Origin: Mytilus californianus
Taxonomy: Eukaryota
Reading direction: 5' to 3'
NCBI RefSeq assembly: GCF_021869535.1
Contig: NW_026262690.1
Span: forward strand, 83,204,001 to 83,268,000
Length of the DNA stretch: 64,000 nucleotides
Shown: piece after piece, positions 571 to 61,872 of the stretch
Layout of the letters: each line of letters opens with the position of its first letter
Position numbering within the stretch: position 1 is the stretch's first letter
Notes under the pieces: generated by a model
Database searches by the model: none
What the model saw: only the letters and a program-made list of their open reading frames with translations
What the model was told of the DNA's origin: nothing
Position numbers and translations under genes: made by a program

Positions 571-3500
571 CTTTATTCAACATCTCATCTGCTTCATCAA
601 GCACCAGCATCTTTATAGATCTTGTTCTCAAATTTCTTCTTTTTATCATATCTGTAGTGAAAAGTAAAATGTTGAAACTATCTCACAGGATGAAATGTGA
701 AGACTTTTTCATTTACAAATAAAATGCTTCGTTGGGGCGCAGCTTGATACGACCGCAGAGGTCGAACCCTGAACAGTTGGGGCAAGTATGGACACAACAT
801 TCAAGCTTGATACAGCTCTGAATTTGGATTGTTATTAAATATTTGACACAGCATAGGTTTCTGACACAGAAAGAATGTGGTCTAAGAACTTGAATTTTTT
901 TAATTTACCTATTATGGTCCAATGTCCAAAATCAAAATACATGGTTAGATTCAGCTTACAAAGAACCCCATATATTCAATTTTTGTTAAAATCAAACAAA
1001 GTTTAATTTTGGACCCCAACTTGGACAAACTTGAAAACTGGGCCCATAATCAAAAATCTAAACACATGTTTAGATTCAGCATATCAAATAACCCCAAGAA
1101 TTCAATTTTTGCTAAAATCAAACTAAGTTTAATTTTGGACCCTTTGGACCTTAATGTAGACCAATTTAAAAAATGGGACTTAAAATTAAAAATCTAAATA
1201 CACGGTTAGATTTGGAATATCAAAGAACCCCAATAATTCAATTTTTGATGAAATCAAACAAAGTTTAATTTTGGACCCTTTTGACCTCAATATGAAACAA
1301 TTTGATAGCGGGGCCCACAAATAAAAAATCTAAATTCATGGTTAGATTCAGCATATCAAAGTACCCCATATATTCAATTTTTGTTGAAATAAAAAAAAGT
1401 TTAATTTTGGACCCCAACTTAGTCCAACTTGAAAACTGGGCCCATAATCAAAAATCTAAACACATGTTTAGATTCAGCATATCAAAGAACCCCAAGAATT
1501 CAATTTTTGTTAAAATCAAACTAAGTTTAATTTTGGACCCTTTGGACCTCAATGAAGACCAATTTAAAAAACGGGACCCAAATTAAAAATCTAAAAACAC
1601 GGTTAGATTTGGCATATCAAAGAACCCCAATAATTCAATTTTTGATGAAATCAAACAAAGTTTAATTTTGGACCCTTTTGACCTCAATATGAACCAATTT
1701 GATAGCGGGGCCTACAAATAAATCAAAGCACGAAAGCGCTGTAAAGGCAGTTAATTACAGGTTGTGTGTATTTTAAGTCCAGTTATATCATTATCTTGCA
1801 TAGTACAGTGTACTTATCAGAGGTGGCTTTCAGTATTTAAGATTTAGAGTTCTCTAATGATATTGAATAAGTTTTATGAATGTCATATTCTGAGCACTAT
1901 ATGAAGGCGATTGTTCTCACTTGTTTATGAACTAGTGCATTATGTCCAGTTTGTACCTTTTTTATCTATGTTTATAGTCAAATTAGTTATCAAAGGTACC
2001 AGGATTATAATTTAATACGCCAGACGTGTGTTTCGTCTACATAAGACTCATCAGTGACGTTCAGATCAAAATAGTAATAAAGCCAAACAAGTACAAAGTT
2101 GAAGAGCATTGAGGACCCAAAATTCCAAAAAGTTGTGCCAAATATGGCTAAGGTAATCTATTCCTTGGATAAGAAAATCCTTAGTTTTTTCATTGGCAAT
2201 CATAACACATCTCCTTATTTATATAATGATCTATATTCAACGACCTCAGGTACAAAAAAAATGTATGTAACTAAACTATGATGGGAAACCTTTGACTTCT
2301 TTCTTTATATAAACTTTTGATTTGGTACCATAGAACTATGTAGAGTAAATGTACATTGCAACATGTCAACTCCAAGCAAAATTATATTTCCAAGCATAAA
2401 GTAATTTATGAATGAAATAAAATGCTCCGCTGGGGTGCAGCTTGATACGACCGCAGAGGTCGAACCCTGAACAGTTGGGGCAAGTATGAACACAACATTC
2501 AAGCTTGATTCAGCACTGAATTTGGATTGTAATTAAATATTTGACACAGAATAGGTTTCTGATACAGAATGAAAGTGGTCTAAGATACTTAAAAAAATTT
2601 AATTTACCTATTCAAACCATATCATTATTATTTGCTTTTATATATAAATCAGAAATAACAAATTTAAAATGGAAAATTTTAAAGAAAAAAAAGGAAAAAG
2701 AATCCCCCCCCCCCAAATTTTTTGAACCCCCTTATGATTCATCACCCCAAAACTCAATCCCAGCCTTCCCTTTGTGGTATGGTACCTTGCAGTACAATTT
2801 CAGAGAGATCCATACACTTGAACACATGTTATTGTCTGGAAACTAGAAAAATGCTTATTTTTGGCCCCTTATTCCTAAACTTTTTGGGCAATTACCCCCA
2901 AACTCAATTCCAGCTTTCCCTTTATGATATGGAACCTTGTAGTACAATTTCATAAAGATCCATACACTTACACACAAGTTATTGCCATGAAACTAGAAAA
3001 ATGCTTGTTTTTTGCCCCTTTTTTGCCCCTTTTTGGCCCCTTTTTCCTAAAATTTGGAGGCAATTACCCCCAAAAATCAATCCCAGCATTCCCTTTGTGA
3101 TATGGAACCTTGTGGTACAATGTCAGAGAGATCCATACACTTACACACAAGTTATGTCTGGAAGTTACATAAATGCTTATTTTTGGCCCCTAATTCCTTA
3201 ACTGTTGGTACCATAACCCCCAAAATCAATCCCCACTTTCCTTTTGTGGTATTGAACCTTATTTTAAAATTTCATTGAGATCCATTCACTTAAACTAAAG
3301 TTAGAGTGCGAAAACTAATGTGTCTTCGGACGACGACGCCGGACGACGACGACGCCAACGTCATACCAATATACGACCACAAAATTTTTTTTGCGGTCGT
3401 ATAAAAAGTTCTTAATTAAGAAATAAACTGATTCGCTGAGCGCAGCTGGATACACCCGCAGAGGTACTACCCTGAACAGCTGGGGCAAAAATGGACACAA

Positions 3501-6500: not shown

Positions 6501-9500
6501 CCTCTTAAATGACATCCAGGTACACAACAACAAGTACTTATCATCGTTAATTAAAAATATAACTGAAATAGTTGCACAGTGCAGAAACCGGAAGTAGAGG
6601 AACAGGATCCGCTACCACGGCGCCACATATTCAGGAACGATAATTTGCTACTTTATATAACTGCGAAAATAACGTTAGACGGGTTCACGTGCATAAACAG
6701 AAATGCGCTTTTAATTGTATAATATAATTCATGTTCAGTCGACCTTTAATTATTATATCAACGACTGAAATGATTTATAAACATCTAGATTGCAGATAAC
6801 ACTCGAAATTAACCCGAGCTCTTTCCACACGGAATTCAAATAATTCTAGTTTGTCAATCGGTTGACTGCTTATAATGCAAAATACTAATATATCAAAAGT
6901 TTTTAAAACTAACTAAACACAATGATCGTTTCTCTATTTCCCAATGTAAATGAAATGAAACAAAAAACATTTTATATCGCAATAAGAAGAGGAGAGAATT
7001 CAACATTTCCGGATCTACTTGGTGTCTAATGACCCCCCACGGAGATAAGTTGGATATCGCGGAAGGAAGGATTAACCCGGCAACTAGAAAGGCATTAAAG
7101 CACTGCCTTTAAAAATCTAAATACATGGTTAGATTCAGCATATCAAAGAACCTCGTATATTCAATTTTTGTTGAAATCAAACAAAGTTTAATTTTGGACC
7201 CCAATTTGGACCAACTTGAAAACTGGGCCCATAATCAAAAATCTAAATACATGTTTAGATTCAGCATATCAAAGAACCCCATATATTCAATTTTTGTTGA
7301 AATCAAACAAAGTTTAAATACTGGACCCTATCTTGGACCAACTTGAAAACTGGGCCCATAATCAAAAATCTAAACATATGTTTAGATTCAGCATATCAAA
7401 GAACCCCAAGAATTCAATTTTAGATGAAATCAAACAAAGTTAAATTTGGACCCTTTTGACCTCAATATGAACCAATTTGATAACGGGGTCCACAAATAAA
7501 AAATCTAAATACATGGTTAGATTCAGCATATCAAGGAACCCCATATATTTGAAAACTGGACCCAAAATTAAAAATCTAAATACACTGTTGGATTCGGCAT
7601 AACAAATAAATAAATGTGATCAAAGATTTACAACTCTAATGCGCCATACTGTGCAATTAAAGATTTCTTCTTGAAATTTTTCAATATTTGAAATTTGAAA
7701 AAAAAAATAATATTTGAAGAATAATTTTTTTAATTTCTGAAATCTGAAATGAGAAAAAATTGACCCCCCACAATTTCTTTTTACCCCCCCCCCCCCCCCC
7801 CCCTTTTTCCCCCCAAAAATTCTTTCCCTCAAGATATGGTCATAATCTCAATTCAAATTTCCAATGGAGTTGGCAACCATAATTACCCATTTAAATTTAC
7901 CATAGTGCTAACTTAATCTATTTTAAAATAGAATTAAAAATATAGTGTCAAATCTTTCATATGGATTTTTTTGTAAAAAAAAAGATGCAACATTTGCAGA
8001 TATTTTTACTGGTCTTCCTTTATAAATATGCATTTCTTTAAACATAATTTAAAAGCAGTGTAAGGGAAGTTACCAAAACGTTGTATTTGTATTACCTCCC
8101 TTACACTGTTTTAAATTATCTTTATTGTTCATTAACCATTACTTTATACATAATTTAAAAGCAGTGTACGGGAGAAAATTTCAATGATGTATTTGATTTA
8201 TCTCCCTTACACTGCTTTAAATTATGTTTTGTACTAAAGTATTTGTCCATTACCCAGGACAACCTTGTTTTTCCCCCTAATTCCTAAACTGTTTGAGCCA
8301 TAACCCCCCAAAGCAAATCCTAACCATCCCTTTGTGGTATGGAAACTTGTAGTATAATTTCAGAGAGATCCATACACCGTTCCACAGTTATTGTCTGGAA
8401 ACTAGAAAATGCTTATTTTTGGCCCCTAATTCCTTAACTGTTGGTACCATAACCCCCAAAATCAATCCCAACCATTCTTTTGTGGTATTTAACCTTATGG
8501 TCAAATTTCAAAAAGATCCATTTACTTAAACTAAAGTTAGAGTGCGAAAACCAATGTGTCTTCGGACGACGACGACGCCGCCAACGTCATACCAATATAC
8601 GACCACAAAATTTTTTTGCGGTCGTATAAAAATAACATGATTAAAGGAATAACGCAAACAAATAAAAGAAGAATTGGTGTCCATAATACACAATTCCCCA
8701 ATCACACTATCACATTTCCAGATTCAGCGATCCACAAAATCTTGGTGCAAACTCCTTATTTAGCAAACATTAAAAAAAAAAATTAAAGTTGAATTTGTGT
8801 ACAAAGTTTCAAGTTTTATTAATATGACCACAACTTCAGTGTTATCTACTGTATACCAAAACTTTAAACTCATAGATAGCACAGAGAAGCAGACACATAG
8901 ACAGTTAAACAAAATGCGCAATTGTAACTTTTTTTCATTTACAATATTTTCAAATCGAAAATATAAGATTAAAAAGTCACCAGCTGAAATTACTCAACCA
9001 TCATGGAAGAGAGGTAATGTGTATACTAAATTAGTAATCAGAATTTTTTTTCAAAAGCAACATGCTCAATGAAAAGTATGTGTCAAGATTTATGCTGGGC
9101 AAAACCAGATGTTTGGTGCCATATACTGTATCAAAAGATATGACTTGTAATTGCAGAGAAAAATAACACGAAACTTGTTACAGACAGATATACAGAGGAA
9201 AATTAGTATTCTCCTCTCCTTTGGAGCGTAGTATAAAAAATCAATGTTAAATGTTACCAAATACTCTGCCTGGTGTTCCTGATACCACATGTTGACCATA
9301 ATCCAGTTTTCTGATGTCTTCGCCAATGTTTGTTCCTCCAATACAGGAATGGCATTGTACATTCATGTAATCCCCCAAAGCTAGAATAACCTGAAATAAA
9401 CATGATGTGTCAAGTCATACATTGTATCTTCTTCAAGTTTCAAATAATTTCTTACATTAGAAAAACAAGCAATCTGAGAGTATTGCATGGCAATACATAG

Positions 9501-44000: not shown

Positions 44001-47000
44001 AAAGAGGTAGAAAGGAGGAAGTTTATTATTTTTTTTTAACTATATGCACATTTGTATTTGGATTTTTTCAGTTCTTTTGCTGCCAGTATCTGTAACAATT
44101 TATCTGACATGATTCAAAACATAGCAACACCAGTTGATTTGAAGTTACAGTTAATACCCATACTACAGCACATGTATCATGATGTGCAAACATCATCTAA
44201 GGTAAAATATAAGGTCACACCTATTTAAGGTATGAGGACATTTTTTTTCTCGAGTATAATCTTATTTCTCATGGGCTTTGGTCAGTCCTTAATAGCAATT
44301 TTCAATCATAAAAAGCATTCAAAATTTATAAACTGCTTGATTTTAAGTTTAACCTTTTGTCGTTGGTATTTGTAAACCAAAGTGTTGACACTTAAAAGCT
44401 CACCAGCATTTCTATCATTTGTTATGAGGTTGAAGTTGTTTTAAGATTTCAACCCAACATTTTGATTCGTATCATTAATAGTATCTAATTTTCTTTTGTG
44501 ATGGGCATAACATAACAAATTAATATTTTTAATAAAATTGAAGATGTTTGAATAGAAAAAAATGAATGTGGTATATTAATTCATTTCACATAATCTCTTT
44601 AATTGCTGTTCTTCATCTTAAAGACACAGGGAGGCTTTAACATGGAGCAAAAGCTCACAATTCACTGCATATTCAAGACAACCCTGGCACCAATTTAAGC
44701 AAAATCTTTGCTAGAAGCCATGATTTACGTTAAGATATAAATTTTGAATATCACTTAGTATTACTATGATATGCTCGCCACGATATAGCCTTTTGGTGCT
44801 GATGTGTCATATAGCAATCACTAATTCATTGATATATTTAGCAACTTAATTTGAAAGTCTTTGTAATATTTTAAATGTCATCTTTCACAGGCAAGACAAG
44901 TGTGTTTGGAACTGCTATCCAGTTTGCCCTCACAGAAGTTTGTCATTAGGACACTACAGACAATGACAGCACTGGCCTGTCAGTCATTGATTGATGTTCA
45001 ATCACAGGTTGATCTATTGATCAGTCGAGTCACTGATGATCCAAGACAATCGGTCAAACTCATAGCTCTAAAAGATCTAAATTGCCTAGCAATGAAAGCA
45101 CCTCAGATGTGGAAATATTCATCTGTAAAGGTATTGTATTGATTTTTTTAATTCTGTTAGATTAATGGCAATAAAGAATTCAATTGGTATATATTCTTGA
45201 CAAATATTTAATTCTTTTTTTTTTTTTTTATTAAAAACACTTTGAAAGAAGTATATATGTGGAAATACTCATCACTAAAGGTGAGCTAAATGAAAACATT
45301 TCAGCTTTCTTAATATCATTGGTTATACTTTCAGAGTCTTATAACAGTTGTACTGCAAGCCAAATCCACAGCTGTTAAGATTGCCATACTAGAAGTCCTA
45401 GGAACATTAGCAAAATCTGTAGCATTTCATCTCTTTCTTACTCATGATGGTACGTATATCAAATAAAATCAGAATATTCCATTGCATTTTGATTTGTTTG
45501 GTCAATGATATTAAGATAAACAATACTTAGTTCCTAGATAGTCTGTTTCACCTTGTCTTATTCCATTTTATACACAAATGTCACGTGATAACATCAGAAA
45601 TCTATACATTGTCTGCCAGAAAACATCAACATATGGACACTGTCACCTTACGGAAGGTTTTCATGAGGGTGAGGAAGTCAACTAGAGCTTTTTATGCCCC
45701 ACCTAGGGGCATTATGTTTTTCAGTCTGTGCGTCTGTTTGTTCCTCCATCCGTTTGTTTGTTCGTCCGTCCGTTCGTCTGTCTGTCCCACTTCAGTTTAA
45801 AGTTTTTGGTCAAGGTAGTTTTTGATGAAGTTGAAGTCCAATCAACTTGAAACTTACAGTACAAATTTCGCGAAAGGCTTCCCAAACTCCGAACACCAAG
45901 TTTTTTCTTGGTGTGACACCAGGAAACTCCGACATCCCTCCCTAAATTCTCGGAGAAATTTGGGAGTATTCCCTCCGACTTCCGCGTAGATTCGCTACCT
46001 TTTGTTTATTGTATTAGCGGCATCTCTCCTAGTCCGGTGCGACGCAGTGTCACACCAGGTAATTAATTGCCCTAATCCTTCTGATCTATACCGGCACGCG
46101 ACAGTCAAGGTATGTGAGATTACTTATGTAATTAAACAATTGTATTTCCTGTCTATTGATAATCAGGTTATATTTCTGATTGCTTGAAACAAATAAAAGA
46201 TTTAAAAGCAAAACGTTGTTGTTAATTCTTTCAATTACACTGTACATTTAAAAATAGTTTTATTAAAAAAAAAACTATATTTGATTTTTACCTCGTTTTT
46301 TTTTTCTGGTCAGTAAATTAATATTTAATTTATAAAAGAGACATACTTGTGTAAAAATAAACGGAGACTTACGCTGAATAAAAGTGGGCAGTTTAAAGGA
46401 AAATTACATGTCTCAAAGTTTTGTATACAAGTAAAAAAGAAAATATTATTCACTATTCGTTATGCTAATAAGTCCACGCCATTTTCATTTTACGATTACA
46501 TAATTGCTTGAAACAAATTAAAGATTTAAAAGCAGAATGTTGTTGTTAATTCTTTCAATTGCATTAAAGTTTTATAACAAAAACTATACTTGATTTTGAC
46601 CTTGTTTAAGTTCATCGGTAAATTATTTTATTTACGAAAAGAGACATACTTGCGTAAAAATAAACAGAAACTAACGCTGAATATAAAAGTGAGCAGTTTA
46701 AAGAAAATTACGTGTCTCAAAATTTGTATATGCAAGTAAAAAAGAAAATACTATTCACCATTCGTTATGCTTAATAAGTCTACGGCATTTTCTCTTTACG
46801 ATTTGTTGGCATTACTTTAGGATAAATAATTACATTTCGGCTACAACAGGAATACTTCTATAGTTGCATCAACTCGTCGTTGCATAATATTCATTTACGC
46901 ACAATGAATGTAAACTTGTGTGTTGTATAAAGGACAGTGATTTTAATTTTTTTTAAAGAAATTAATTGCCGTCGGAAGACGATACACATCTCAGTGATCA

Positions 47001-50000: not shown

Positions 50001-53000
50001 TTTTTGTGTTTTAACGCCACTTTTAAGCACCGCTTTTGGGCTATTTCGTGGCGGCCAGTTTTTATTGGTGGAGGAAGCCGGAGTGCCCGGAGAAAACCAC
50101 CGACCTTCAATAGGAAAACTGACAATCCTAGTCAATTAAGATTGGAGTCGAGTGCACCCGCACGAGGGGGGTTCGAACTCACAACCTCAGTGTTGACTGG
50201 CTAGTGATTACAGTAGTAACTACTTAGACCACTCGGCCACCGAGGCCCCCTACTAAAACGGAGAGTAAATATATACAGTCCCTGCAGAGATTGCATAAAA
50301 ATATATTATTGATACTTGTGTATTGCAGCTTTGTTTACAGTGTGCTGTACACCTGGTGAAAAAGTTTCCAGATACAACCATGTTTTTCCTGTCCGAAATT
50401 GTGGAACTTTTAGAGACAACTGAAAGCGGTAAGTGGAGAATATTTGTAACTCATAGCAATCTGCAGAACACTAGGTAAAAAAGCTTACATAGCCATGTCC
50501 AACTTGTCAGAACTTATATGTAGGAGGCATAAACGTTTTGTGCAAAATGGACATATAAAATATTAGGGTAGACACATTCTGCACCCTTATAAACATGTCT
50601 TTTATGTTTAAATGGGTAATGGTCAGAAATGGGCTTAAATACAAATTGTGTTATTACTCTTATGTTCATATTAAATAAGATGAATAGATTAAACAGCATT
50701 CAAGATACATTTATTTCTGTATCACCGAGGAGATTAATAGGTTAATTAATGATTTATCATGGTATGTATATGAACAAAGGAAAAGTAAGGTAGACCTAAC
50801 AACACAATAAAACCAGAGTTATTGGCCACACTTTTTTGGTATTATCTGACTTTTTAGCTTGGTGAAGTTCAATATTTTTTGTGGACAGTTTTCAAGGAGG
50901 CAATGAATTTCGAATAAGATACTGATTGATTGTTTATTCCGCAATTTCATTTCAATATATTTTGTGCAGAAACTGAAGTATTTGAATGACGAAATTGCTA
51001 AAACTTTGAAATTCAATATCTAACATAATTTTTTTCAGAGGAACATGCTTTGATATTGTGTGAAGGATTAGCAGCCATTGGTTCAGAAAATCACATATAC
51101 ATACGAGAGATAATTCCCAACATTCTTTCACTGTTACAGAGTAGTGCCATTTGTCAAGAAGGTCAAGTTAAGGTAAGGCTATTCTTATAAGACCATGACT
51201 TCCTTCACTCTTCACAACTCTTAAATGGGTGATTAATTTTTTTTGGCTACAGCATGCAATGAGACAAATTTTTTGTAAATGACAGATGATCTGCAAAATA
51301 ATTTCTTATGTTTATAAAGGGGGTCAATTTCAGCCTAGAATCTCAGGTAAAACAAAAAATAACTTTAATGATAAATTGGGACTTACTATAAGCATATCTA
51401 TATATCAAACAATTAATTTCATAATTCAGAATTTCAAATTATAACCTCTGAACAGTTTAATCTTGATTCAGTAAATTGCCATATTTGCCCTTATTAATAC
51501 ATATATTATTTCCAATTTTTATTGCAGACCTACCTTGGGACTCTAATATTCCAAGCAGCAGGTAGTGAAACAATCCCAACAGAGATACAGAAACTGATTC
51601 TCAGAAATGGACATAAGTCACCATGGTTTATGTATAAACTGGCCAGACAGGCTATGAGATATGGACAGCATCCTGTTGCAGCTGACCTCTTCAATTCTCT
51701 CTCGCATCTGGTAAGTAAACTTACCAGTGAAAACATTGTTGCACAAATGAATCACTTTAAAATTAAGCTTTACTACTATGGATTTAGCTTCAAAGATTCC
51801 AGTTTTATGATTTGGAAGGAAAATGATAGCTACTGGATTATTCGTTTTATGGTTTGGTCATTTGATCTTGCTGAAAATTATTATTTCGTTCAACACTTTA
51901 ATTATGGTTTTCTGTTTCAATGAATTTAACACTAATAAATATTACATGAATAATTATTTTTCATCACTGCATCTGTTGTCCATCCATCATGAAGTTTTTG
52001 ATGTAAAATTCTCATTTGTTACACTTTGGATTCATTTATTTTTTTATGAGTACAAATTTTTGTGGATTAAGGAAAACTTGTATGGTCTGAAAAGCCTTTC
52101 TTCTAATGCTTGAAATATTGATTAGTAATGACATGAGGCAATGTTTTATAGCGGAATTTACAGGTCCAAATAAGTCCCATAATGTACCTTGTCCTTTCCC
52201 AAAAATAAATTTCTATTGTATGCTTATTTTCTTTTAAGGTTGCATCAGAACATCTCCATTTTTGGATGGTAGCTTTACAAGAAATTAGTGAAGGTGAAAG
52301 TTATCTGATGAAAGAGAAAGATGACAGTGGGATGACAAAGACACTATTATGTTATCAGAAATCTCTTTCTTCACTGAAGGTAAGCTTCCAGTTCTTAGAG
52401 AAGAAATTTATTGTAACACTTGCCTAATAATAAAGATATTAAACAATCTGTTTTTCACAAACATTTATAATAATTTTATAACATTTTCTTTTGGAAAACT
52501 ATGTATGGAGATGTTCTGATGCAACCTAAAAAGAAAATAAGCATACAATAGAAATTTATTTTTGGGAAAGGACAAGGTACATTATGGGACTTATTTGGAC
52601 CTGTAAATTCCCATATAAAACATTGCCTCATATCATTACAAGTTTGATTGTAATTACTATCATCTCAGACTATCATACACTGCAATGTAGGCTTTGATAT
52701 TTTGGTTGATTATATTAGATATTCAAGTTAGTAAACAGAAAATATTTAGCCCAGAATTTTATATGACACGAAAAATAAACATCATGAATCACACTAAGTG
52801 AATATGTACCTTGTTTTGTGTCCATAAGTAGTACCTTTAAGTAAAATTCCTCAAGTATATGCAATTATTTTTACAGGCTGCTTCCACACAAGTGTTCCCG
52901 ATGCAGTTTCAAACAGATCTAGTCCATCTTAGAATAGAACTCCTCCAGGCTCTGACTCAACTGATACAGACCTGTAATACATTCAGGACATGTCCTCCAC

Positions 53001-56000
53001 CTGCCATAGCTACAGCATTAGCACTAACTAATGGTCAAGAAATATCACGCTGTGGTCAGATATTGTCACAGGTAGGTCAAAGTAGTTGGTGCATACCGGT
53101 ATGTATTTTTCAGACGTTAACATAATGATAATTATTAATATTTTAGGTTTAGTGTGTTTATGCAGTTGTGACATTTGAACTAGAAATTCAACTCATTTTA
53201 TATTTGTACAGTACAGAAATTGTCAGTCAAATTTTCTCACCAAGAGAAAATATTTGACATAAAGTTCAAGAAGGACCGTTCTTAAGATCAACAGTTAAAA
53301 AATTAGTTCAGTTATATAGTGCTTCTTCTCTTTTCACAAATAACAAGTGACATTTGAGTATAACTGATGACCAAATTTAAATAGAAGCTTTTTTAGCTCA
53401 CCTGGCCCAAAGGGCCAAGTGAGCTTTTCTCATCACTTGGCGTCTGTTGTCCGTCGTCGTTACATTTTGAACTTCTTCTAGTGAACCACTGAATGGAATG
53501 AAACAAAACATGGCATGAATGTTCCTTATGAGGTGCTGACCAAGTGTTGTTACTTTGCAGTCGGTCCATCATCCAAGATGGCCACCAGCGGGGGACTTAG
53601 TTTAACATAGGACCCTATGGGAAATACATACAAATGTCTTCTTTTAGAGAACCATATGAATGGAATGAAACCAAACATGGCATGAATGTTCCTTATGAGG
53701 TGCTGACCAAGTGTTGTTACTTTGCAGTCAACCCATTATCCAAGATGGCCGCCAGCGGGTAACTTAGTTTAACATAGGACCCTATGGGAAATACATGCAA
53801 ATGTCTTCTTTTAGAGAACCAGTGAATGGAATGAAACCAAACATGGCATGAATGTTCCTTATGAGGTGCTGACCAAGTGTTGTTACTTTGTAGCCGATCC
53901 ATCGTCCAAGATGGCCGCCAGGGGGGGACTTAGTTTAACATAGGACCCTATGGGAAATACATACAAATGTCTTCTTTTAGAGAACCACTGAATGGAATGA
54001 AACAAAACATGGCATGAATGTTCCTTATGAGGTGCTGACCATGTGTTGTTACTTTGCAGTCGGTCCATCATCCAAGATGGCCGCCAGCGGGGGACTTAGT
54101 TTAACATAGGACCCTAAGGGAAATACATACAAATGTCTTCTTTTACCGAACATGTGAATGGAATGGAACCAAACATGGCATGAATGTTCCTTATGAGGTG
54201 CTGACCAAGTGTTGTTACTTTGCAGTCGGTCAATCATCCAAGATGTTCACCGGGTGGGGACTTAGTTTAACATAGGACCCTAAGGGAATTACATACAAAT
54301 GTCTTCTTTTAGAGAACCACAGAATGGAATGGAACCAAACATGGCATGAATGTTCCTTATGAGGTGTTGACCAAGTGTTGTTACTTTGCAGTCGTTCAAT
54401 CATCCAAGATGGCCGCCAGCGGGGGACTTAGTTTAACATAGGACCCTATGGGAAATACATACAAATGTCTTCTTTTAGAGAACCAGTGAATGGAATGAAA
54501 CCAAACATGGCATGAATGTTCCTCCTTATGAGATGCTGACCAAGTGTTGTTACATTGCAGCCGATCCATCATCCAAGATGGCCGCCAGCGGAGGACTTAG
54601 TTTAACTTAGGACCCTATGGGAAATACATACAAATGTCTTCTTTTAGAGAACCACTGAATGGAATGAAACAAAACATGGCATGAATGTTCTTTATGAGGT
54701 GCTGACCAAGTGTTGTTACTTTGCAGTCGGTCCATCATCCAAGATGGCCGCCAGCGGGGGACTTAGTTTAACATAGGACCCTATGGGAAATACATACAAA
54801 TGTCTTCTTTTGGTATAAAACCACTAATTCATAGCCCCATTGCTTTCTATGTTAAATTCTGCAATTTCAAGCATAAATGGCTACTTTATCTTAATTTCAA
54901 ATAAAGTGGCAGTTATTTCATGTCTAAACTGTACCTTATGCTGACTTGTGCTGAAAAAATCAACATACCTTTAATTGCATATTAGAGCGTACTGGTTCCC
55001 GGAAGTTTGATAGTACAAAAACAGGAACTTCTGATCTGAACAACAGGCCAAATGAGCCCTCCTATTAAAATTTCCTATACTTCTTTATTATTCAAATAAA
55101 ACTTTCAACAAGGGTTCTACAGTGACCCCAAGTCCCCAACCTTTCATTCGATACTAAAACTACCCAAATATTTCCACTATTGACAAAGATGCAGCTATGC
55201 GTAGGAACTATTTTGTTTAAAATATGTACTACTTTCTTGTATGTTCTTTCCGACCGGGCCTGAATTAGTAGTTCTATACCTATAACAGCACCAACTTTGT
55301 TATATTGACTTCTGCTTGACTTTATTTCCTTCTATGATCTATTTTTAGCATAGAAAAACACATAAAGCTTTTGTCAAAACACTATATCACTGGATTCAAG
55401 CTCAAATTGAACTGGTATTAACATATGCGTTAAACAAAGAAAACTACATATGGATACTAATAGTGACAGATATGACACTTTTTCAATTTTTACCAGTTCT
55501 GATTTGTTAATATCTACTCAAATAACAGTGTTCTTACTTATATGTCTTATTTTTATCAGAGATTCTTCCTTGAATATAAATACAGTGGTCCAAACATAAA
55601 ATATAATTGATAATTTTGTCCCCCCTTTTTTCTACATGTTGGAAAAGGAGAGTGATTTGGTAAAAAAAAACATACTTTTATGTATAAACATGGATCAACA
55701 AGAGCAATTTATGTATCTCCAAGCTAGACAATTTGCTAAAATGGTCTTAAAATGCATTTCAAGTGAGATTTTGGAATTCCTATATAAGTATACACCAATA
55801 ATCCTTGAAATAAATAATTCACCAAGAAACACAATAAAAAATGAACACTCACTATATAATATGACCAAAAACAATATTTATACTATAAACTAGTCATAAT
55901 ATACAAGTTTCATTGGTTTCAGTGTTAGATAATCCAAAAATTTAAATTTCAGGTAAAATCTTAACTGTGTGCATGCTAAATGACCAAAAAAGGCTAAAAT

Positions 56001-59000
56001 ACCTTCTTGTAGTAATTTGAGGGCTGTAATTTGACACTAAAATAATTGTTACATAAAAAAAATAATGTAACATGATTTCTGACAACAAATGTGACCAATT
56101 TTCACTGTAAAGGGTATGATTTCTAAAAATAGAATTTCACATGCCTGTCAGTAATAGGTATAAAACCACTAATTCATAGCCCCATTGCTTTCTATGTTAA
56201 ATTCTGCAATTTCAAGCATAAATGGCTACTTTATCTTAATTTCAAATAAAGTGGCAGTTATTTCATGTCTAAACTGTACCTTATGCTGACTTGTGCTGAA
56301 AAAATCAACATACCTTTAATTGCATATTAGAGCGTACTGGTTCCCGGAAGTTTGATAGTACAAAAACAGGAACTTCTGATCTGAACAACAGGCCAAATGA
56401 GCCCTCCTATTAAAATTTCCTATACTTCTTTATTATTCAAATAAAACTTTCAACAAGGGTTCTACAGTGACCCCAAGTCCCCAACCTTTCATTCATTAGT
56501 AAAACTACCCAAATATTTCCACTATTGACAAAGATGCAGCTATGCGTAGGAACTATTTTGTTTAAAATATGTACTACTTTCTTGTATGTTCTTTCCGACC
56601 GGGCCTGAATTAGTGGTTCTATACCTTTTACAGAACCACTGAATGGAATGAAACAAAACATGGCATGAATGTTCCTTATGAGGTGCTGACCAAGTGTTGT
56701 TACTTTGCAGTCGTTCAATCATCCAAGATGGCCGCCAGCGAGGGACTTAGTTTAACATAGGACCCTATGGGAAATACATACAAATGTCTTCTTTTAGAGA
56801 ACCAGTGAATGGAATGAAACCAAAGGTGGCATGAATGTTCCTTATGAGATGCTGACCAAGTGTTGTTACATTGCAGCCGATCCATCATCCAAGATGGCCA
56901 CCTGGAGGGACTTAGTTTAACATAGGACCCTACGGGAAATACAAACAAATGTCTTCTTTTAGAGTACCACTGAATGGAATGAAACCAAACATGGCATGAA
57001 TGTTCCTTATGAGGTGCTGACCAAGTGTTGCTTCTTTGTTGCCAATTTACTGTTCAAGATGGCCACCAGGATATTTTATTGAATAACAGGACCAATATTA
57101 AACCAAATTTGGCCTCAAACATTATTTGGGTATCTGTTATGATTTTTATCTATCTTTACATGATTTCTAAAACCAAAGTAGAGTCAGGTGAGCGACACAG
57201 GCTCTTGAGAGCCTCTAGTTTGTGAAAAGAGTCACTTGAATGTAAAATTGTAATATTTTGTCTTCAGAAATTTCAATTGTCAATAAATTCTACCAATACA
57301 TGGTAAAATATTTAAATGTGTGTGATAAAATTTGAACATATATTGAATTGAAGTCTGATTAGAAAAAAATAATATTCTGTATGCATTTTATATTTCAGTT
57401 AACAAAGTGTATGAAAGATTTTGAAAATCTAAAACAGAAATTTGGAGATTTGTATTTAACTTGTTTTGATGCTGACCCACAGACTTTATATACAGTGACA
57501 CAGTATCCTTTAGAGTAACCAATCATGAAGAACTTGATATATGTCATAGAGAGTTTTATCACAGTAGCCAATCACAGCAGGCATTACATATATCAAGATT
57601 TAATTAAATGCAATGGAAAGAGGCATCTATGATACCTAGTTTGTTGCTATATTAAGTTGAAAGTTTGAGATCTGCCCCAAATTATTTCCTCGTTTGGAAG
57701 ATTATTTAGTATCATCATTTTTTAGGCATTACTTCTCATCACTTTTCTTCTATTTGTTAATTTTAGCAACATTTGTAAATGTAACAAAAGTGTTAAATTA
57801 GCTAAAATTGATGAAAAATAAATGTATGAGCTGAAACAAAATACCAAATTGCACCTGACTATGTACAATGATGTAAACATAGTTTTCAAATATTTGATGA
57901 AAAAAACACTTTTGTTAAAACTGAAATAAACAACCATTTGGCAATTTTGGGAGATTTGTAAAATTTAAGAAAGTTCTATAGATAACTTTTGGTAAAAAAA
58001 AATGACTTTGAATTTAAATGTTTTAGATCTGCATATTGGTATCAACTTTATATAGGAGACTGTGATAATTACTTTTTCTTAACCAATTATAAAGATTACA
58101 GTATTGTTGTGAAGTAATGAAGGCTGGAGTATCAGCAGTTATAACAACAGATAACTCCAGGTAAGTGGAAGAGTTTAGTTCAGGGTTAAATTCATGTAAT
58201 ACAAATACATCATTGAAAATCAGAATAAAGGGAGATCTGGGGTACATGTCAAGTAGACTGCAAGTAATCAAAGTATTAAATCCAAACGACGTCTAGACAT
58301 ATTGTCTAAAATGAGAGATATGTGTCTATACAATATTTCAAGCTCTAGATGAGGATTTCCAAAATCTGTGATCATTCATCGATATGATTGATACAAAACA
58401 GGAATATACACTGATGAAGTTGGACATTCATATTAACTTGTGGAAGAGTTAAAAGAAATTTTTGAGTTTTGACATCTCTCCCTCTTTGTATTTATGAGGA
58501 ATATGACGAAAGGTATCGAGATAAACACGCAATAAAAATCAATTTAGAACATTCACTTAACTCAGTAATGGAGGTATGACAGATACAAAATTACAACCAC
58601 CAAGCTACAAGGAAAACATACTAGATATTACCATAAGTATTCTTGGCACTTGACTAAACGCTAACCAAGGGTTTTAATGTGCCGTTTAACAAAATACCTG
58701 CCTTCAGTGTGAAATTCCCAGAACCTTAACTGTATCACATATGATAACATTTGTAATTTCAGGTTGTTCCCTGTGTCCAGTGAGAATAGTGATGTCCTGT
58801 CAGTAACACTAGTTACCATACAGAAAGATCTGAACCATATACTCAAAACTAATAGCCAAGCTTTAACTCATGAGGTAGGACAACATTGTTGGTTGATAAG
58901 CAGAAAAACTATTAAAAAGCAAAACTATTTATATCTGTTTAAGATGAGCCTTCGTTTCAATTTCTGTCATCAAAATTTGCAGTACATGGCTTTAATGTCT

Positions 59001-61872
59001 TCTTTTGAACATAATTATGTCTCATTGCATAGGGACCCTATATATCCGACATATATTCTTGTAAATTTTAATTCCTTTTGTTCTATTTGGACTCTAATGA
59101 AATAAACACTTTATAAATTTTATGTGTCTGAACTAAACATTTGAAAGCCAGGATGCGTAAATATGCTTCAACTTTTGGAGCTATAGGACTAAAAATGACC
59201 TAAACAGAAAAACAAATTCATCCAAGGTCAACTTTGCCTGTCAGAGGGAATTTGAACTTTGTTTCTTAATAGTTGCTTGACAGAATATTACAGTATTATA
59301 TTTCATTATTTAAAAATCAATTACTGCATTATTTATTCTATCAAAATGTTTGACAGTCAATGTGTTGTTTTGTATGTTTATATTTGTAAAAATATGAGCC
59401 CCTCTTTTACAGCACATGGATTTCCTATGTAAAAGCGTACAGAGTTTGTTACAAGTACCATTTAGATACCCACGATATTTCTTCCAGAGTATACAAACAA
59501 CAAAACTTAATGTAAGTTGAATTTTTCATTCAAATGTATTTGCTTTTAGCTAACCTGGCCCAAAGGGCCAAGTGAGCTTTTCTCATCATTTGGCGTCCGT
59601 TGTCGTCTGTTAAGTTTTACAAAAATTTACTCCTCTGAAACTACTGGGCGAAATTTTACTAAACTGGGCCACAATCATCATTGGGGTATCTAGTTTAAAA
59701 AAGGTGTCCGATGACCCCCCTTGCCAACCAAGATGGCTGACATGGCTAAAAATAGAACATAGGTGTAAAATGCAAGTTTTGTCTATATTTTTGAAAACAC
59801 CGTTTTAAATAGCAAAAATCTGACAGGAGCAAAAATGTTCAGAATGTTGAGCTCTACCAATTGTTCATATATGTCCAAACTGTCAGACTGCCCTTAAATG
59901 ACAAATTTTACCATCTTTTTTCATTTTTGCCTATTATCTTGAAAAATATAATAAATAGATAGAAACTTTAAACTGCAAAATTGATCAGCAAGACAAGTTC
60001 TACAAATAAGTCCACATGGTCGCAATCGTCAGTCCACTTCTTATTGGAGTTATTGCCCTTTGATGACAATTTTTACCAATTGTTTGCGTTTTTGCCTTAT
60101 ATATTAAAAATTATAATAGATAGATAGAAACTTAAATAAGCAAAAATGATCAGCAAGACAAGATCTACTATTAAGACAATATGGAGGAAATCGTTCGACT
60201 CCTTATTGGAGTTATTGCCCTTTTATGATGATTTATACCTTTTTTTTTTGGCGTTTTGTCTTATATGGTAAAAATTATAATAGATAAATAGACACTTTAA
60301 ATAAAAAAAAATTATCAGCAAGGCAAGATCTACCAACAAGTCAAATTTTGCTGATTTAGTTAGTAGACTGTCAATAAAAAAAACTGGTTTTTGTCATGAA
60401 TTCTATTCTGGTTTACAATGCTGGAGAGTGTCCTTTGTTGAATATGCATAGACCAAGGTGAGCAACATAGGCTCTTTAGAGCCTCATGTTAGAATTTTTT
60501 TACAATAATACATGGTTTGTCTGTTTAGGCTTGTTATTCAGCTTAATTGGTCTTAAGGGTAAGTGTGATTATTTTCACCACTTTGCATCCATCATGAGTT
60601 TTTTTTTTACTAATTCAAATATGTTAACCTGTTTGCAAATATACTATTTTGATAAAAAATTAACCAAGGAATAAAGAATATATCACTTATACAAAGTTTC
60701 AATCATGAGATGTGGCCAGTTGAAATTTTTTTTCTTTTAATTTGCTTACATTTTCAAAAATGTCATAGATCTTCATAGATAAGATCTTGAATTTTATGTG
60801 TGTGAAATATAAGTTTTCATTTGTATTTCTGTGTTCTTACAGTTAGCCGTTACACCCCAGCAGAACATGAGAATGGAGCCATTACTTGTACATCATAACA
60901 CTTTATTTACTCTGAAAGTTGAAGGGGTGATTGAACACAAGCAACAGATGTTTAGACAAGTTAGTCAAATCTGTATAGCTGTAAACACAGAAATTACTAG
61001 CCAACAACATAATACAGACACAAAGGTAAAGCGTTATAGAACACAAGCAACAGATGTTTAGACAAGTTAGTCAAATCTGTATAGCTGTAAACACAGAAAT
61101 TACTTACCAACAACATAATACAGACACAAAGGTAAAGTATTATAGAACACAAGCAACAGATGTTTAGACAAGTTAGTCAAATCTGTATAGCTGTTAACAC
61201 TGAAATAACTAACCAACAACATAATACAGACACAAAGGTAAAGTATTATAGAACACAAGCAACAGATGTTTACATAATCTAACTTATGATATGATTTCCA
61301 TGTTCAAAACATTCGTTTCTTATGTAACCTTCAATAGGTATGCTCAAGATCAAAATTGTAGTAGGTCTAATTTATAATAGGTTTCAGATCTTTAGGGATA
61401 TGGTTAGAATTCTTCAGTGAAAGTATCCAAGATGCAAAGCCTCGGGTGTAATCAGGATGATGAGACCTACATTTCATGGTTCAGTAATTGGTTAAATGTT
61501 TGGCTTCAGTTTAGGATTAGTATGGTATAATATGAAACTTTCATGCTATATAATAATTACACAAAATTTGTATGTCAAAAGTGATAAAGTGTCAACCTTC
61601 TGTCTTACTTTTGATCTTTTCAGGTCAAGGATCCAAACAGAAGTTATGAAGAAACAGTTCGACCACATAAAGACTATTTCTCCTGTAGTTTTCTGTTATC
61701 ATTTCCTGTTGCTGGACTTTACAGTGTACAAATCAGAGGTTTAGTTTTAGATGACGCTGGAACAAAATGGAATACAGGACCTCAGTTTACAATGACCTTT
61801 AAATCATATGACGATACAATTCATAGAAAGCCTAAAACAGTAGTAAGCAGAACTTCATTTGGACAGATGTAG
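41078..61872 (+). CDS. INTS7: Integrator complex subunit 7, 933 aa, 20 coding exons, complete
   Basis: Exons 41078-41171, 42467-42596, 42849-42995, 43373-43510, 44072-44201, 44891-45130, 45335-45449, 49188-49313, 49662-49777, 50329-50428, 51039-51172, 51528-51710, 52239-52379, 52877-53071, 57399-57502, 58095-58160, 58763-58874, 59413-59511, 60843-61025 and 61624-61872 total 2802 nt with consistent phases. Motifs ELDKGLRS, KYPFPILIN, HLEKILNIDEFV, TPVDLKLQLIPILQHM, VASEHLHFW, PPPAIAT, FDAD, LKVEGVI match INTS7. Confidence 0.96.
43542..43758. mobile_element. Small MITE (tactgtggattcatt-type termini)
   Basis: tgctgtgattcatt ... aatgaatccacagta. Partial relatives at ~32340-32425 and ~52025-52075. 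Confidence 0.55.
45689..48866 (+). mobile_element. HINE-like element family C, interrupted by a 2.66-kb insertion
   Basis: 5' ttttatgcccc..ggggcat hairpin and (gtcc/gtct)n microsatellite, internal ~200-bp repeat, and 3' ggggcatcc plus gtgt..ggacac hairpin. Confidence 0.75.
45857..48512. mobile_element. Non-autonomous DNA element with TA duplication, 6-bp TIRs (CAGTAC/GTACTG) and an internal ~324-bp tandem duplication
   Basis: Removing the element and one TA restores gaaactTAgtacacatgttccc, matching the sister repeat at 48723. Internal direct repeat 46179-46502 / 46503-46803. Confidence 0.75.
49987..50250 (-). mobile_element. tRNA-derived SINE
   Basis: Minus-strand head ggggcctcggtggccgagtggtctaag (A box), gttcgaaccc (B box) and (aatc/aaatc)n tail. 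Confidence 0.8.
52125..52639. repeat. 135-bp inverted duplication (52125-52259 vs 52505-52639) spanning the INTS7 exon 13 acceptor
   Basis: The right arm is the reverse complement of the end of intron 12 plus the first 21 nt of exon 13, with 4 mismatches seen by eye. Confidence 0.92.
53389..57220 (+). mobile_element. HINE-like family A element carrying a ~166-bp satellite array (about 10.6 units), interrupted at 54812-56625
   Basis: 5' ttttttagctcacctggcccaaagggccaagtgagc plus (gtc)n; 3' caggtgagcgacacaggctcttgagagcctctagtt. Unit starts at 53483, 53649, 53816, 53982, 54148, 54314, 54480, 54649, 56633, 56799 and 56964. Confidence 0.88.
54812..56625. mobile_element. Non-autonomous composite element: two 469-bp direct repeats, each with its own ~19-bp TIRs, around an 876-bp core (KolobokP-like)
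   Basis: Repeats 54812-55280 and 56157-56625 both start ggtataaaaccactaattc and end gaattagt(a/g)gttctatacc. Outer flanks are TTTT/TTTT inside a satellite monomer. Confidence 0.8.
57503..58094 (+). other. INTS7: U12-type (minor spliceosome) GT-AG intron, INTS7 intron 15
   Basis: 5' splice site GTATCCTTT (57503-57511), branch site TTTCTTAAC (58075-58083) about 12 nt from the AG, and no polypyrimidine tract. The flanking exons join in frame (phase 2). Confidence 0.88.
59544..60490 (+). mobile_element. HINE-like family A element (complete ends, degenerate internal repeats)
   Basis: ttttagctaacctggcccaaagggccaagtgagc 5' end and ggtgagcaacataggctctttagagcctcatgtt 3' end. Confidence 0.75.
60933..61271 (+). 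repeat. 106-bp tandem triplication of the INTS7 exon 19 3' end and its splice donor
   Basis: Units start at 60933, 61039, 61145 and 61251 (partial). GTAAAG donors at 61026, 61132 and 61238. Confidence 0.92.

What the first reader, a model, noticed from the sequence alone, without database searches (positions are those of the whole stretch)
52125..52639. Inverted duplication able to sequester the entire 3' splice site of in-frame INTS7 exon 13
Seen: 52505-52639 (intron 13, starting 126 nt after the donor) is a reverse-complement copy of 52125-52259 with 4 mismatches in 135 bp. The copied segment is host sequence, not a recognisable transposon: the branch-point region, polypyrimidine tract, AG and first 21 exonic nt. 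In pre-mRNA it would form a ~135-bp stem with the rest of the exon and its donor in a 245-nt loop. Exon 13 is 141 nt, phase 0-0, so skipping keeps the frame and removes 47 aa including the conserved VASEHLHFW motif. Known: long intronic stems cause exon skipping and recruit ADAR. Inference: a recent template-switch event that creates a built-in RNA-structure switch, or a hypomorphic allele, in a core Integrator subunit.
Basis: partly seen in the sequence, partly recalled or inferred. Interest (0 to 1): 0.8.

Follow-up and report, generated by a model that had tools for sequence, protein, structure and literature searches.

The report
Segregating inverted duplication in INTS7 intron
A 133-base backwards copy of the upstream splice-acceptor region sits in the next intron of the single-copy INTS7 gene of what is probably a mollusc; it is real DNA and is missing from at least one other chromosome of the species, so it looks like a recent replication slip, and the little RNA data available shows the exon being spliced in.

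Summary
Arms 52125-52259 and 52505-52639 are reverse complements (135 nt, 4 mismatches, sharp edges, 245-nt spacer). The left arm covers the 3' splice site and the first 21 nt of a 141-nt, phase 0-0 INTS7 exon (52239-52379).

- **Not an assembly artefact.** A 254-nt contig from a different study and organism label matches 52436-52688 without a difference, across both junctions of the right arm.
- **Polymorphic.** In another DNA run of the same species, a contig joins 52506 directly to 52640 with only 6 other letters between. Both flanks are single-copy. This fits a fold-back template-switch mutation: 6 nt replaced by 133 nt copied in reverse from 245 nt upstream, with an AT microhomology at the first junction.
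- **Not a transposon.** The full arm has only two copies in the genome, although its outer 76 nt lie in an old dispersed repeat.
- **Not conserved.** A distant relative lacks the repeat.
- **Possible effect.** The pre-mRNA could form a very stable stem (MFE -263 kcal/mol). The modelled unpaired probability of the 3' splice site falls from 0.41 to 0.03.
- **RNA evidence.** Available RNA shows exons 12-13-14 joined and no skipping junction. Depth is very low and the genotypes of the RNA samples are unknown.

Most likely this is a neutral or mildly deleterious structural allele, not a built-in switch.

The parts
52125..52259 (+). Left arm, the source segment: 114 nt of the 3' end of intron 12 (branch-point region, polypyrimidine tract, AG at 52237-52238) plus the first 21 nt of exon 13
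   Evidence: only two full-length copies in the 1.65-Gb genome
52505..52639 (-). Right arm, the inverted copy. The inserted part is 52507-52639 (133 nt). 52505-52506 (AT) is shared with the empty allele, giving a 2-nt microhomology at the first switch point
   Evidence: X8 contig 52436-52688 with 0 differences spans both junctions; X5 contig joins 52506 to 52640 with ATATTA between
52260..52504 (+). Spacer, the 245-nt loop in RNA: the remaining 120 nt of exon 13, its GT donor at 52380, and 125 nt of intron 13
   Evidence: 52380-52504 is single-copy in the genome
52239..52379 (+).
   Evidence: RNA joints 51709/10->52238/9 and 52377/9->52875/7 with GT..AG; Pfam 45.1 bits; PDB 7cun_G 553-594
51528..51710 (+). 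3' part of the upstream INTS7 exon (exon 12), ending on a codon boundary at 51710
   Evidence: X25 RNA contig piece 51526-51709; INTS7_N profile 460-503
52877..53071 (+). Downstream INTS7 exon (exon 14): 195 nt, phase 0, INTS7_HB profile 68-132
   Evidence: 85.6 bits
52086..52200 (.). Old dispersed-repeat fragment, 74-80% identical to copies elsewhere. The left arm starts in its middle and runs past its end, so the arm edges are not transposon edges
52236..52236 (+). Segregating SNP at position -3 of the acceptor. The reference has A (AAG acceptor); the X5 individual and the right-arm copy carry the T state (TAG)

Best explanation
This is a recent, still segregating structural mutation of the template-switch (fold-back or snap-back) kind. 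Inferred origin: during replication or repair synthesis through intron 13, the growing strand left its template after ...TATGTAT (52506). It paired its terminal AT with the AT at 52258-52259 of the sequence it had just made, and copied that sequence backwards for 133 nt, down to 52125. It then returned to the original template at 52640, losing 6 nt (ATATTA). Shown: the filled and empty alleles, the junction coordinates, and the fact that the copy is of local unique sequence. The strand-switch mechanism itself is inferred. As a by-product, carrier pre-mRNA can fold into a 135-bp stem that buries the branch-point region, polypyrimidine tract, AG and first 21 nt of INTS7 exon 13. The left arm is transcribed about 250-515 nt before the right arm (380 nt between matching ends), so splicing factors can load first. 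INTS7 is single-copy, and the allele occurs in several samples. I therefore expect at most a partial loss of exon 13 inclusion: a neutral to mildly deleterious allele, not a selected regulatory device.
For: The inverted repeat is exact at the stated coordinates. An independent DNA contig (X8, other study, other organism label) matches 52436-52688 with 0 differences across both junctions. The empty allele appears in X5 as a joint 52506->52640 with 6 letters between, at depth 3.9 against about 11 in the flanks, and the neighbouring contig ends exactly at 52506. Both flanks are single-copy in the genome, so that joint is allelic and not paralogous. The full arm has only two copies in the genome, and its edges do not coincide with the old repeat at 52086-52200. 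One arm mismatch (52236) is a segregating SNP whose other allele equals the copy. Arm divergence (3%) is similar to allelic divergence in the same region (22 differences in 995 nt). A distant relative with the same exon structure has no inverted repeat. The pattern 'short fragment replaced by a reverse-complement copy of nearby sequence' is the four-point template-switch model (PMC5453318), and such events are known to create RNA hairpins (PMC8794818). For RNA, the X25 contig joins exons 12-13-14, X21 has 5 reads on the 13-14 junction, and no 12-14 joint is listed.
Against: The empty allele rests on one low-depth Logan contig with only 30 letters on its shorter side, and I could not read that contig itself. 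Whether X5 also carries the filled allele is inferred from contig break points and depth, not seen directly. The inserted piece (133 nt) and the loop (245 nt) are larger than the 'short' template switches usually described. Microhomology at the second junction is unclear. The RNA samples' genotypes at this site are unknown and coverage was about 2-3x, so a substantial splicing effect in carriers is not excluded. Thermodynamic modelling predicts almost complete occlusion of the 3' splice site (unpaired probability 0.41 -> 0.026).
Confidence: 0.78

Rival explanations
1. Hypomorphic or splicing-altering allele. In carriers the 135-bp stem forms often enough to cause measurable exon 13 skipping, giving an in-frame loss of 47 aa of the helical bundle, or slowed splicing of intron 12. 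That would lower functional INTS7 from that chromosome.
For: The stem is extremely stable. The modelled 3' splice site accessibility drops from 0.41 to 0.026 once the nascent RNA reaches about 52580. The reference haplotype also carries a weaker AAG acceptor at 52236. Skipping preserves the frame. Intronic inverted repeats are known to promote loop-out exon skipping (bioRxiv 10.1101/2025.03.07.642063), and sequestering a branch point blocks splicing (PMC2275289).
Against: No 12-14 junction appears in either RNA run, while 12-13-14 and 13-14 junctions are seen. The gene is single-copy, yet the allele is found in several samples. The splice site is transcribed before its partner. Power is very low and genotypes are unknown.
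Confidence: 0.25
2. A selected, built-in RNA-structure switch that regulates INTS7 exon 13 inclusion.
For: Only the geometry supports this: the stem covers exactly the acceptor of an in-frame exon.
Against: It is polymorphic, with an empty allele. It is absent from a distant relative with the same exons. No alternative isoform is seen. The arm differences look like ordinary allelic variation and not like compensatory change.
Confidence: 0.03
3. Source of double-stranded RNA. The intronic hairpin is an ADAR editing substrate or is diced into small RNAs. This does not exclude the other readings.
For: A 135-bp near-perfect duplex is predicted. Template switches have been proposed as a source of new hairpin RNA genes (bioRxiv 10.1101/2023.04.19.537475).
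Against: No intronic RNA reads covered either arm (depth 0 in X21 at 52126-52232 and 52447-52660), so there is no evidence either way. There is no Rfam match.
Confidence: 0.15
4. Assembly artefact, for example a chimeric fold-back read.
For: Fold-back chimeras occur in long-read data. The best-matching run may be the assembly's own source.
Against: The X8 contig from another study and organism label spans both junctions with 0 differences. The arms differ at 4 positions and are separated by 245 nt of correct exon and intron sequence.
Confidence: 0.02
5. Transposon structure: terminal inverted repeats of a MITE or foldback element.
For: The outer 76 nt of the arm resemble a dispersed repeat. 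The genome holds young elements with long inverted arms (L014).
Against: The arm includes the unique polypyrimidine tract and 21 nt of a conserved exon. Only 2 full copies exist. The arm edges do not match the repeat family's edges. The spacer is the exon itself.
Confidence: 0.02

Closest known systems
Template-switch mutations under the four-point model (Loytynoja & Goldman 2017, PMC5453318; Monttinen & Loytynoja 2022, PMC8794818)
   Same: A short fragment (6 nt) is replaced in one step by the reverse complement of nearby sequence on the same chromosome. This creates a perfect inverted repeat able to form an RNA hairpin. The event is seen as a polymorphism.
   Different: The copied fragment (133 nt) and the distance to its source (245 nt) are much larger than the 'short' events those papers focus on. 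Here the source includes a working splice acceptor and exon sequence.
Loop-out exon skipping by intronic inverted repeats, e.g. inverted Alu pairs (bioRxiv 10.1101/2025.03.07.642063)
   Same: Complementary segments on either side of an exon can pair in pre-mRNA and loop out the exon.
   Different: Here the arms are not transposon copies. One arm is the acceptor itself, so the splice site is occluded as well as looped out. No skipping has been observed.
Inverted-repeat-driven circular RNA formation (Liang & Wilusz 2014, PMC4201285)
   Same: Short inverted repeats flank an exon.
   Different: Back-splicing needs a free acceptor upstream of the exon. Here the acceptor lies inside the stem, so circularisation is not expected.
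Larger replication-based inverted duplications (FoSTeS/MMBIR, ODIRA; PMC10766183)
   Same: Template switching between complementary strands with little homology, yielding inverted copies.
   Different: Those are kilobase- to megabase-scale copy-number variants. This is a 133-nt local insertion.

Membership tests
Template-switch mutation (four-point model) | The derived allele carries a reverse-complement copy of nearby sequence in place of the ancestral fragment | tested here: met
   Right arm = reverse complement of 52125-52259. The alternative allele has 6 letters (ATATTA) between 52506 and 52640.
Template-switch mutation (four-point model) | The pre-event state is observable in a closely related sequence at the same locus | tested here: met
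   X5 contig joint at depth 3.9, with both flanks single-copy in the genome. It rests on a single contig.
Template-switch mutation (four-point model) | Short-range switch and return, with source and target within a few hundred nt | tested here: met
   The source ends 245 nt upstream of the target. The copied length of 133 nt is unusually long for the class.
Template-switch mutation (four-point model) | Microhomology at the switch points | tested here: inconclusive
   A 2-nt AT is shared at the first junction. The second junction could not be resolved without the letters of the empty-allele contig.
MITE or foldback transposon | Many dispersed copies with the same terminal inverted repeats and target-site duplications | tested here: not met
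   Only 2 full copies of the arm, both at this locus. The arm contains exon sequence. The old repeat's edges (52086-52200) do not match the arm edges.
Conserved RNA structure regulating alternative splicing | Complementary boxes conserved across species or fixed in the species | tested here: not met
   An empty allele segregates. Distant relative L012 has no inverted repeat around the orthologous exon.
Conserved RNA structure regulating alternative splicing | The regulated isoform (exon 12-14 junction) exists | tested here: inconclusive
   No such joint in X21 or X25, and 12-13-14 is seen. Depth was about 2-3x and genotypes are unknown.
ADAR-edited long intronic dsRNA | Clustered A-to-G differences between RNA and DNA within the arms | not testable with these tools
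   No RNA reads on either arm.
INTS7 (Integrator subunit 7) | Matches to the INTS7_N and INTS7_HB profiles above the curated cut-offs, in colinear exons | tested here: met
   INTS7_N 89 bits (cut-off 42). INTS7_HB 45.1 and 85.6 bits (cut-off 23) at consecutive profile positions 15-67 and 68-132. All INTS7_HB matches in the genome fall at this one locus.

The most novel reading that the evidence does not exclude
The insertion allele is a natural splicing hypomorph of an essential, single-copy Integrator subunit. In carriers the 135-bp stem competes with co-transcriptional recognition of the exon 13 acceptor, causing allele-specific in-frame skipping and/or dsRNA processing (editing, small RNAs). 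The filled and empty alleles in wild animals would then be a ready-made experiment on how long-range RNA structure affects splice-site choice.
Probability: 0.22. Interest if true: 0.55.

Novelty: new member of a known kind. Interest (0 to 1): 0.36.

Why it matters
This is a clean, dated-by-polymorphism example of a large template-switch insertion, with both the before and after alleles apparently still present in the population. The copied piece happens to be a functional splice acceptor of an essential gene. That makes one question directly testable in genotyped animals: can a 135-bp stem completed about 260-380 nt downstream of a splice site (52240 to about 52500-52620; models occlusion once the transcript reaches about 52580) beat co-transcriptional spliceosome assembly? 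As it stands there is no evidence of any effect on INTS7. The event belongs to a known mutational class, so by itself it is a modest finding.

Tried and rejected
- **Orthologous introns from other individuals.** An exact look-up of the exon-14 ORF found no record. A word-based protein search returned only two distant contigs. L011 stops about where the insertion site would be, so it is uninformative. L012 is a distant relative and shows only absence.
- **Frequency of such events in the genome.** In those 200 kb plus the window, the only other young local inverted repeat is a transposon with more than 1,700 candidate copies. The event type is therefore not obviously common, but the sample is too small for a rate.
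- **Known RNA families.** Rfam at a permissive threshold gave nothing on the arms.
- **Earlier scan notes.** They held nothing on this feature.
- **RNA editing and exon-skipping ratios.** The single raw-read RNA run gave about 2-3x depth on exons 13 and 14, none on exon 12, and none on the arms. No ratio or editing call is possible.
- **Circular RNA reading.** Rejected because the acceptor lies inside the stem.

Full report
**1. The observation**

The arms are 52125-52259 and 52505-52639, 135 nt long, 97% complementary, with 245 nt between them. A base-by-base comparison finds four mismatched positions: 52132/52632, the adjacent pair 52151-52152/52612-52613, and 52236/52528. Similarity ends abruptly at both ends. 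It is the only long near-perfect local inverted repeat in the 64-kb window.

The left arm holds 114 nt of intron, including the AG at 52237-52238, plus the first 21 nt of the exon at 52239-52379. That exon is followed by GT at 52380.

**2. The gene**

- Translated exon pieces match Pfam INTS7_N: 89 bits for 44891-45133, and the end of the profile for 51528-51710.
- They also match INTS7_HB. The exon in question scores 45.1 bits at profile positions 15-67. The next exon, 52877-53071, scores 85.6 bits at positions 68-132.
- The 47-aa peptide aligns to human INTS7 residues 553-594 in the Integrator structure 7CUN. The VASEH..FW motif is conserved and also appears in a distant relative.
- All INTS7_HB matches in the 1.65-Gb genome fall at this one locus, so the gene is single-copy.
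- RNA junctions show that the three exons join in phase 0.

Run labels ('mollusc metagenome' RNA runs hold the exons), the genome size, the 33% G+C content and about 2% allelic divergence point to a mollusc. I did not identify the species.

**3. Real DNA or artefact?**

I laid four public runs on 50200-53400. Run X8 comes from a different study and carries a different organism label. It contains a 254-nt contig that matches 52436-52688 with no differences and no gaps. That contig crosses both the inner (52505) and outer (52639) junctions of the right arm. The inverted copy therefore exists in independently sequenced DNA. An assembly artefact is excluded unless X8 derives from the same specimen.

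**4. It is polymorphic**

Run X5 is the same species from another study. It has a contig that joins 52506 directly to 52640 ('skips 133') with six other letters, ATATTA, in between. Its depth is 3.9, against about 11 in the flanks. The neighbouring 335-nt contig ends exactly at 52506, as expected at a heterozygous branch point.

The spacer (52380-52504) and the downstream flank (52640-52860) each occur once in the genome. The joint is therefore an allele of this locus, not a paralogue. Both joint coordinates coincide with the arm boundaries to within two bases, and the six novel letters cannot arise from mis-traversal of an assembly graph.

I conclude that a chromosome lacking the right arm segregates in the species. 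The caveat is that this rests on one low-depth contig whose letters I could not read.

**5. Not a transposon**

A search of the whole genome with the arm finds only the two local copies at full length. About a dozen other places match arm positions 1-75 at 77-91% identity. Alignment shows that these belong to an old dispersed repeat. In the window it occupies 52086-52200, and in other copies it extends further upstream and ends at the equivalent of about 52200.

The arm starts in the middle of this fragment and runs 59 nt past its end, into the unique polypyrimidine tract and the exon. The duplication therefore copied whatever lay at the locus.

**6. Age and conservation**

- At 52236 the X5 individual carries T in the left arm, which is the state preserved in the right-arm copy. 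The reference has A. At least one of the four arm differences is therefore ordinary segregating variation.
- This SNP also changes the acceptor from TAG to the weaker AAG on the reference haplotype.
- X5 differs from the reference at 22 of 995 positions plus 9 gaps across 51149-52152. The 3% difference between the arms is no greater than the difference between alleles.
- A contig from a distant relative (L012) has orthologous exons 12, 13 and 14 at 1794-1973, 2644-2799 and 3281-3475. It has no inverted repeat around the exon.

Together with the empty allele, this marks the event as recent and unconserved.

**7. Origin (inferred)**

The filled and empty alleles differ by replacement of 6 nt with 133 nt that are the reverse complement of sequence ending 245 nt upstream. 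The AT at 52505-52506 is shared with the source (52258-52259). This is the pattern formalised as the four-point template-switch model (PMC5453318). Such events are known to create RNA hairpins in a single step (PMC8794818).

The simplest path is a snap-back. The nascent strand ending at 52506 folds onto itself and primes at the AT of 52258-52259. It copies back to 52125 and returns to its template at 52640. The event is larger than the 'short' switches usually catalogued. I could not resolve microhomology at the second junction.

**8. Consequence (mostly inferred)**

- Folded as RNA, 52100-52665 forms the full stem. MFE is -263 kcal/mol against -109 +/- 6 for shuffles, z = -25.
- I modelled intron 12 to intron 13 with and without the insertion. 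The mean unpaired probability of 52195-52240 falls from 0.41 to 0.026. The donor is unaffected (0.37 against 0.35). Occlusion sets in once the transcript reaches about 52580.
- Against a strong effect, an RNA contig of the species (X25) joins 51526-51709, 52238-52377 and 52875-53071, which is exons 12-13-14. Five raw reads of X21 cross the 13-14 junction. No 12-14 junction is listed in either run.
- Depth was only about 2-3x, exon 12 had no raw reads, and the genotypes of those animals are unknown. No RNA read lay on either arm, so editing could not be assessed.
- The acceptor is transcribed well before its partner, the gene is single-copy, and the allele turns up in several samples.

On balance I expect at most a partial effect.

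**9. Context in the genome**

In 200 kb of sampled genome plus the window, I found one other young local inverted repeat: 637-nt arms, 98.7% identical. It is a transposon with more than 1,700 candidate copies. Unique-sequence inverted duplications like this one are therefore not obviously frequent.

**10. Verdict**

The feature is a real, recent, polymorphic inverted templated insertion, a new and unusually large member of the known template-switch class. By accident it is complementary to the acceptor of an in-frame exon of an essential gene. There is no evidence that it acts as a switch. A hypomorphic effect remains possible (about one in four) and is cheaply testable in genotyped animals.

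Noticed in passing
window 60933-61272: A 106-nt unit is repeated 3.2 times in tandem at 96% identity. The unit contains the 3' end of a downstream INTS7 exon together with its GT donor (…AAG|GTAAAG), so the gene carries three near-identical candidate donors in a row. 106 is not a multiple of 3.
   Followed up: partly
window 53472-54811 and 56625-57030: A 165-166-nt satellite (8 copies, 92% alike, then 2.5 more copies) lies on both sides of the composite element that another note places at 54808-56629. That element appears to have inserted into the satellite inside the intron downstream of exon 14.
   Followed up: partly
window 50200-50250 and 52023-52083: Two short stretches are extremely high-copy in all runs. 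Summed contig depth is about 3x10^5 and 6x10^3 in X5, against about 11 for unique sequence. They are also abundant in RNA reads, so they are fragments of very abundant, transcribed repeats.
   Followed up: no
L014:7661-8297 and 8696-9333 (G000:C110:10007661-10009333): Inverted arms of 637 nt, 98.7% alike, 398 nt apart. The arm has more than 1,700 candidate copies in the genome, most of them 98-99% identical and often in inverted pairs. This is a very young, probably active element with long inverted ends.
   Followed up: partly
L012:3534-4408: In a distant relative's INTS7, the intron after exon 14 holds about nine tandem partial copies of the 3' half of exon 14, 78-86% identical at the protein level.
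   Followed up: no
window 52236: The reference haplotype has A at position -3 of the exon 13 acceptor (AAG). Another individual and the inverted copy preserve T (TAG), and a distant relative has CAG. The chromosome that carries the hairpin also carries the weaker acceptor.
   Followed up: partly
window 52436-52688 in run X8: A DNA run labelled as a different organism (B) holds this intronic stretch with zero differences, although alleles within species A differ by about 2%. This suggests a very close or hybridising taxon, a shared haplotype, or a labelling issue.
   Followed up: no
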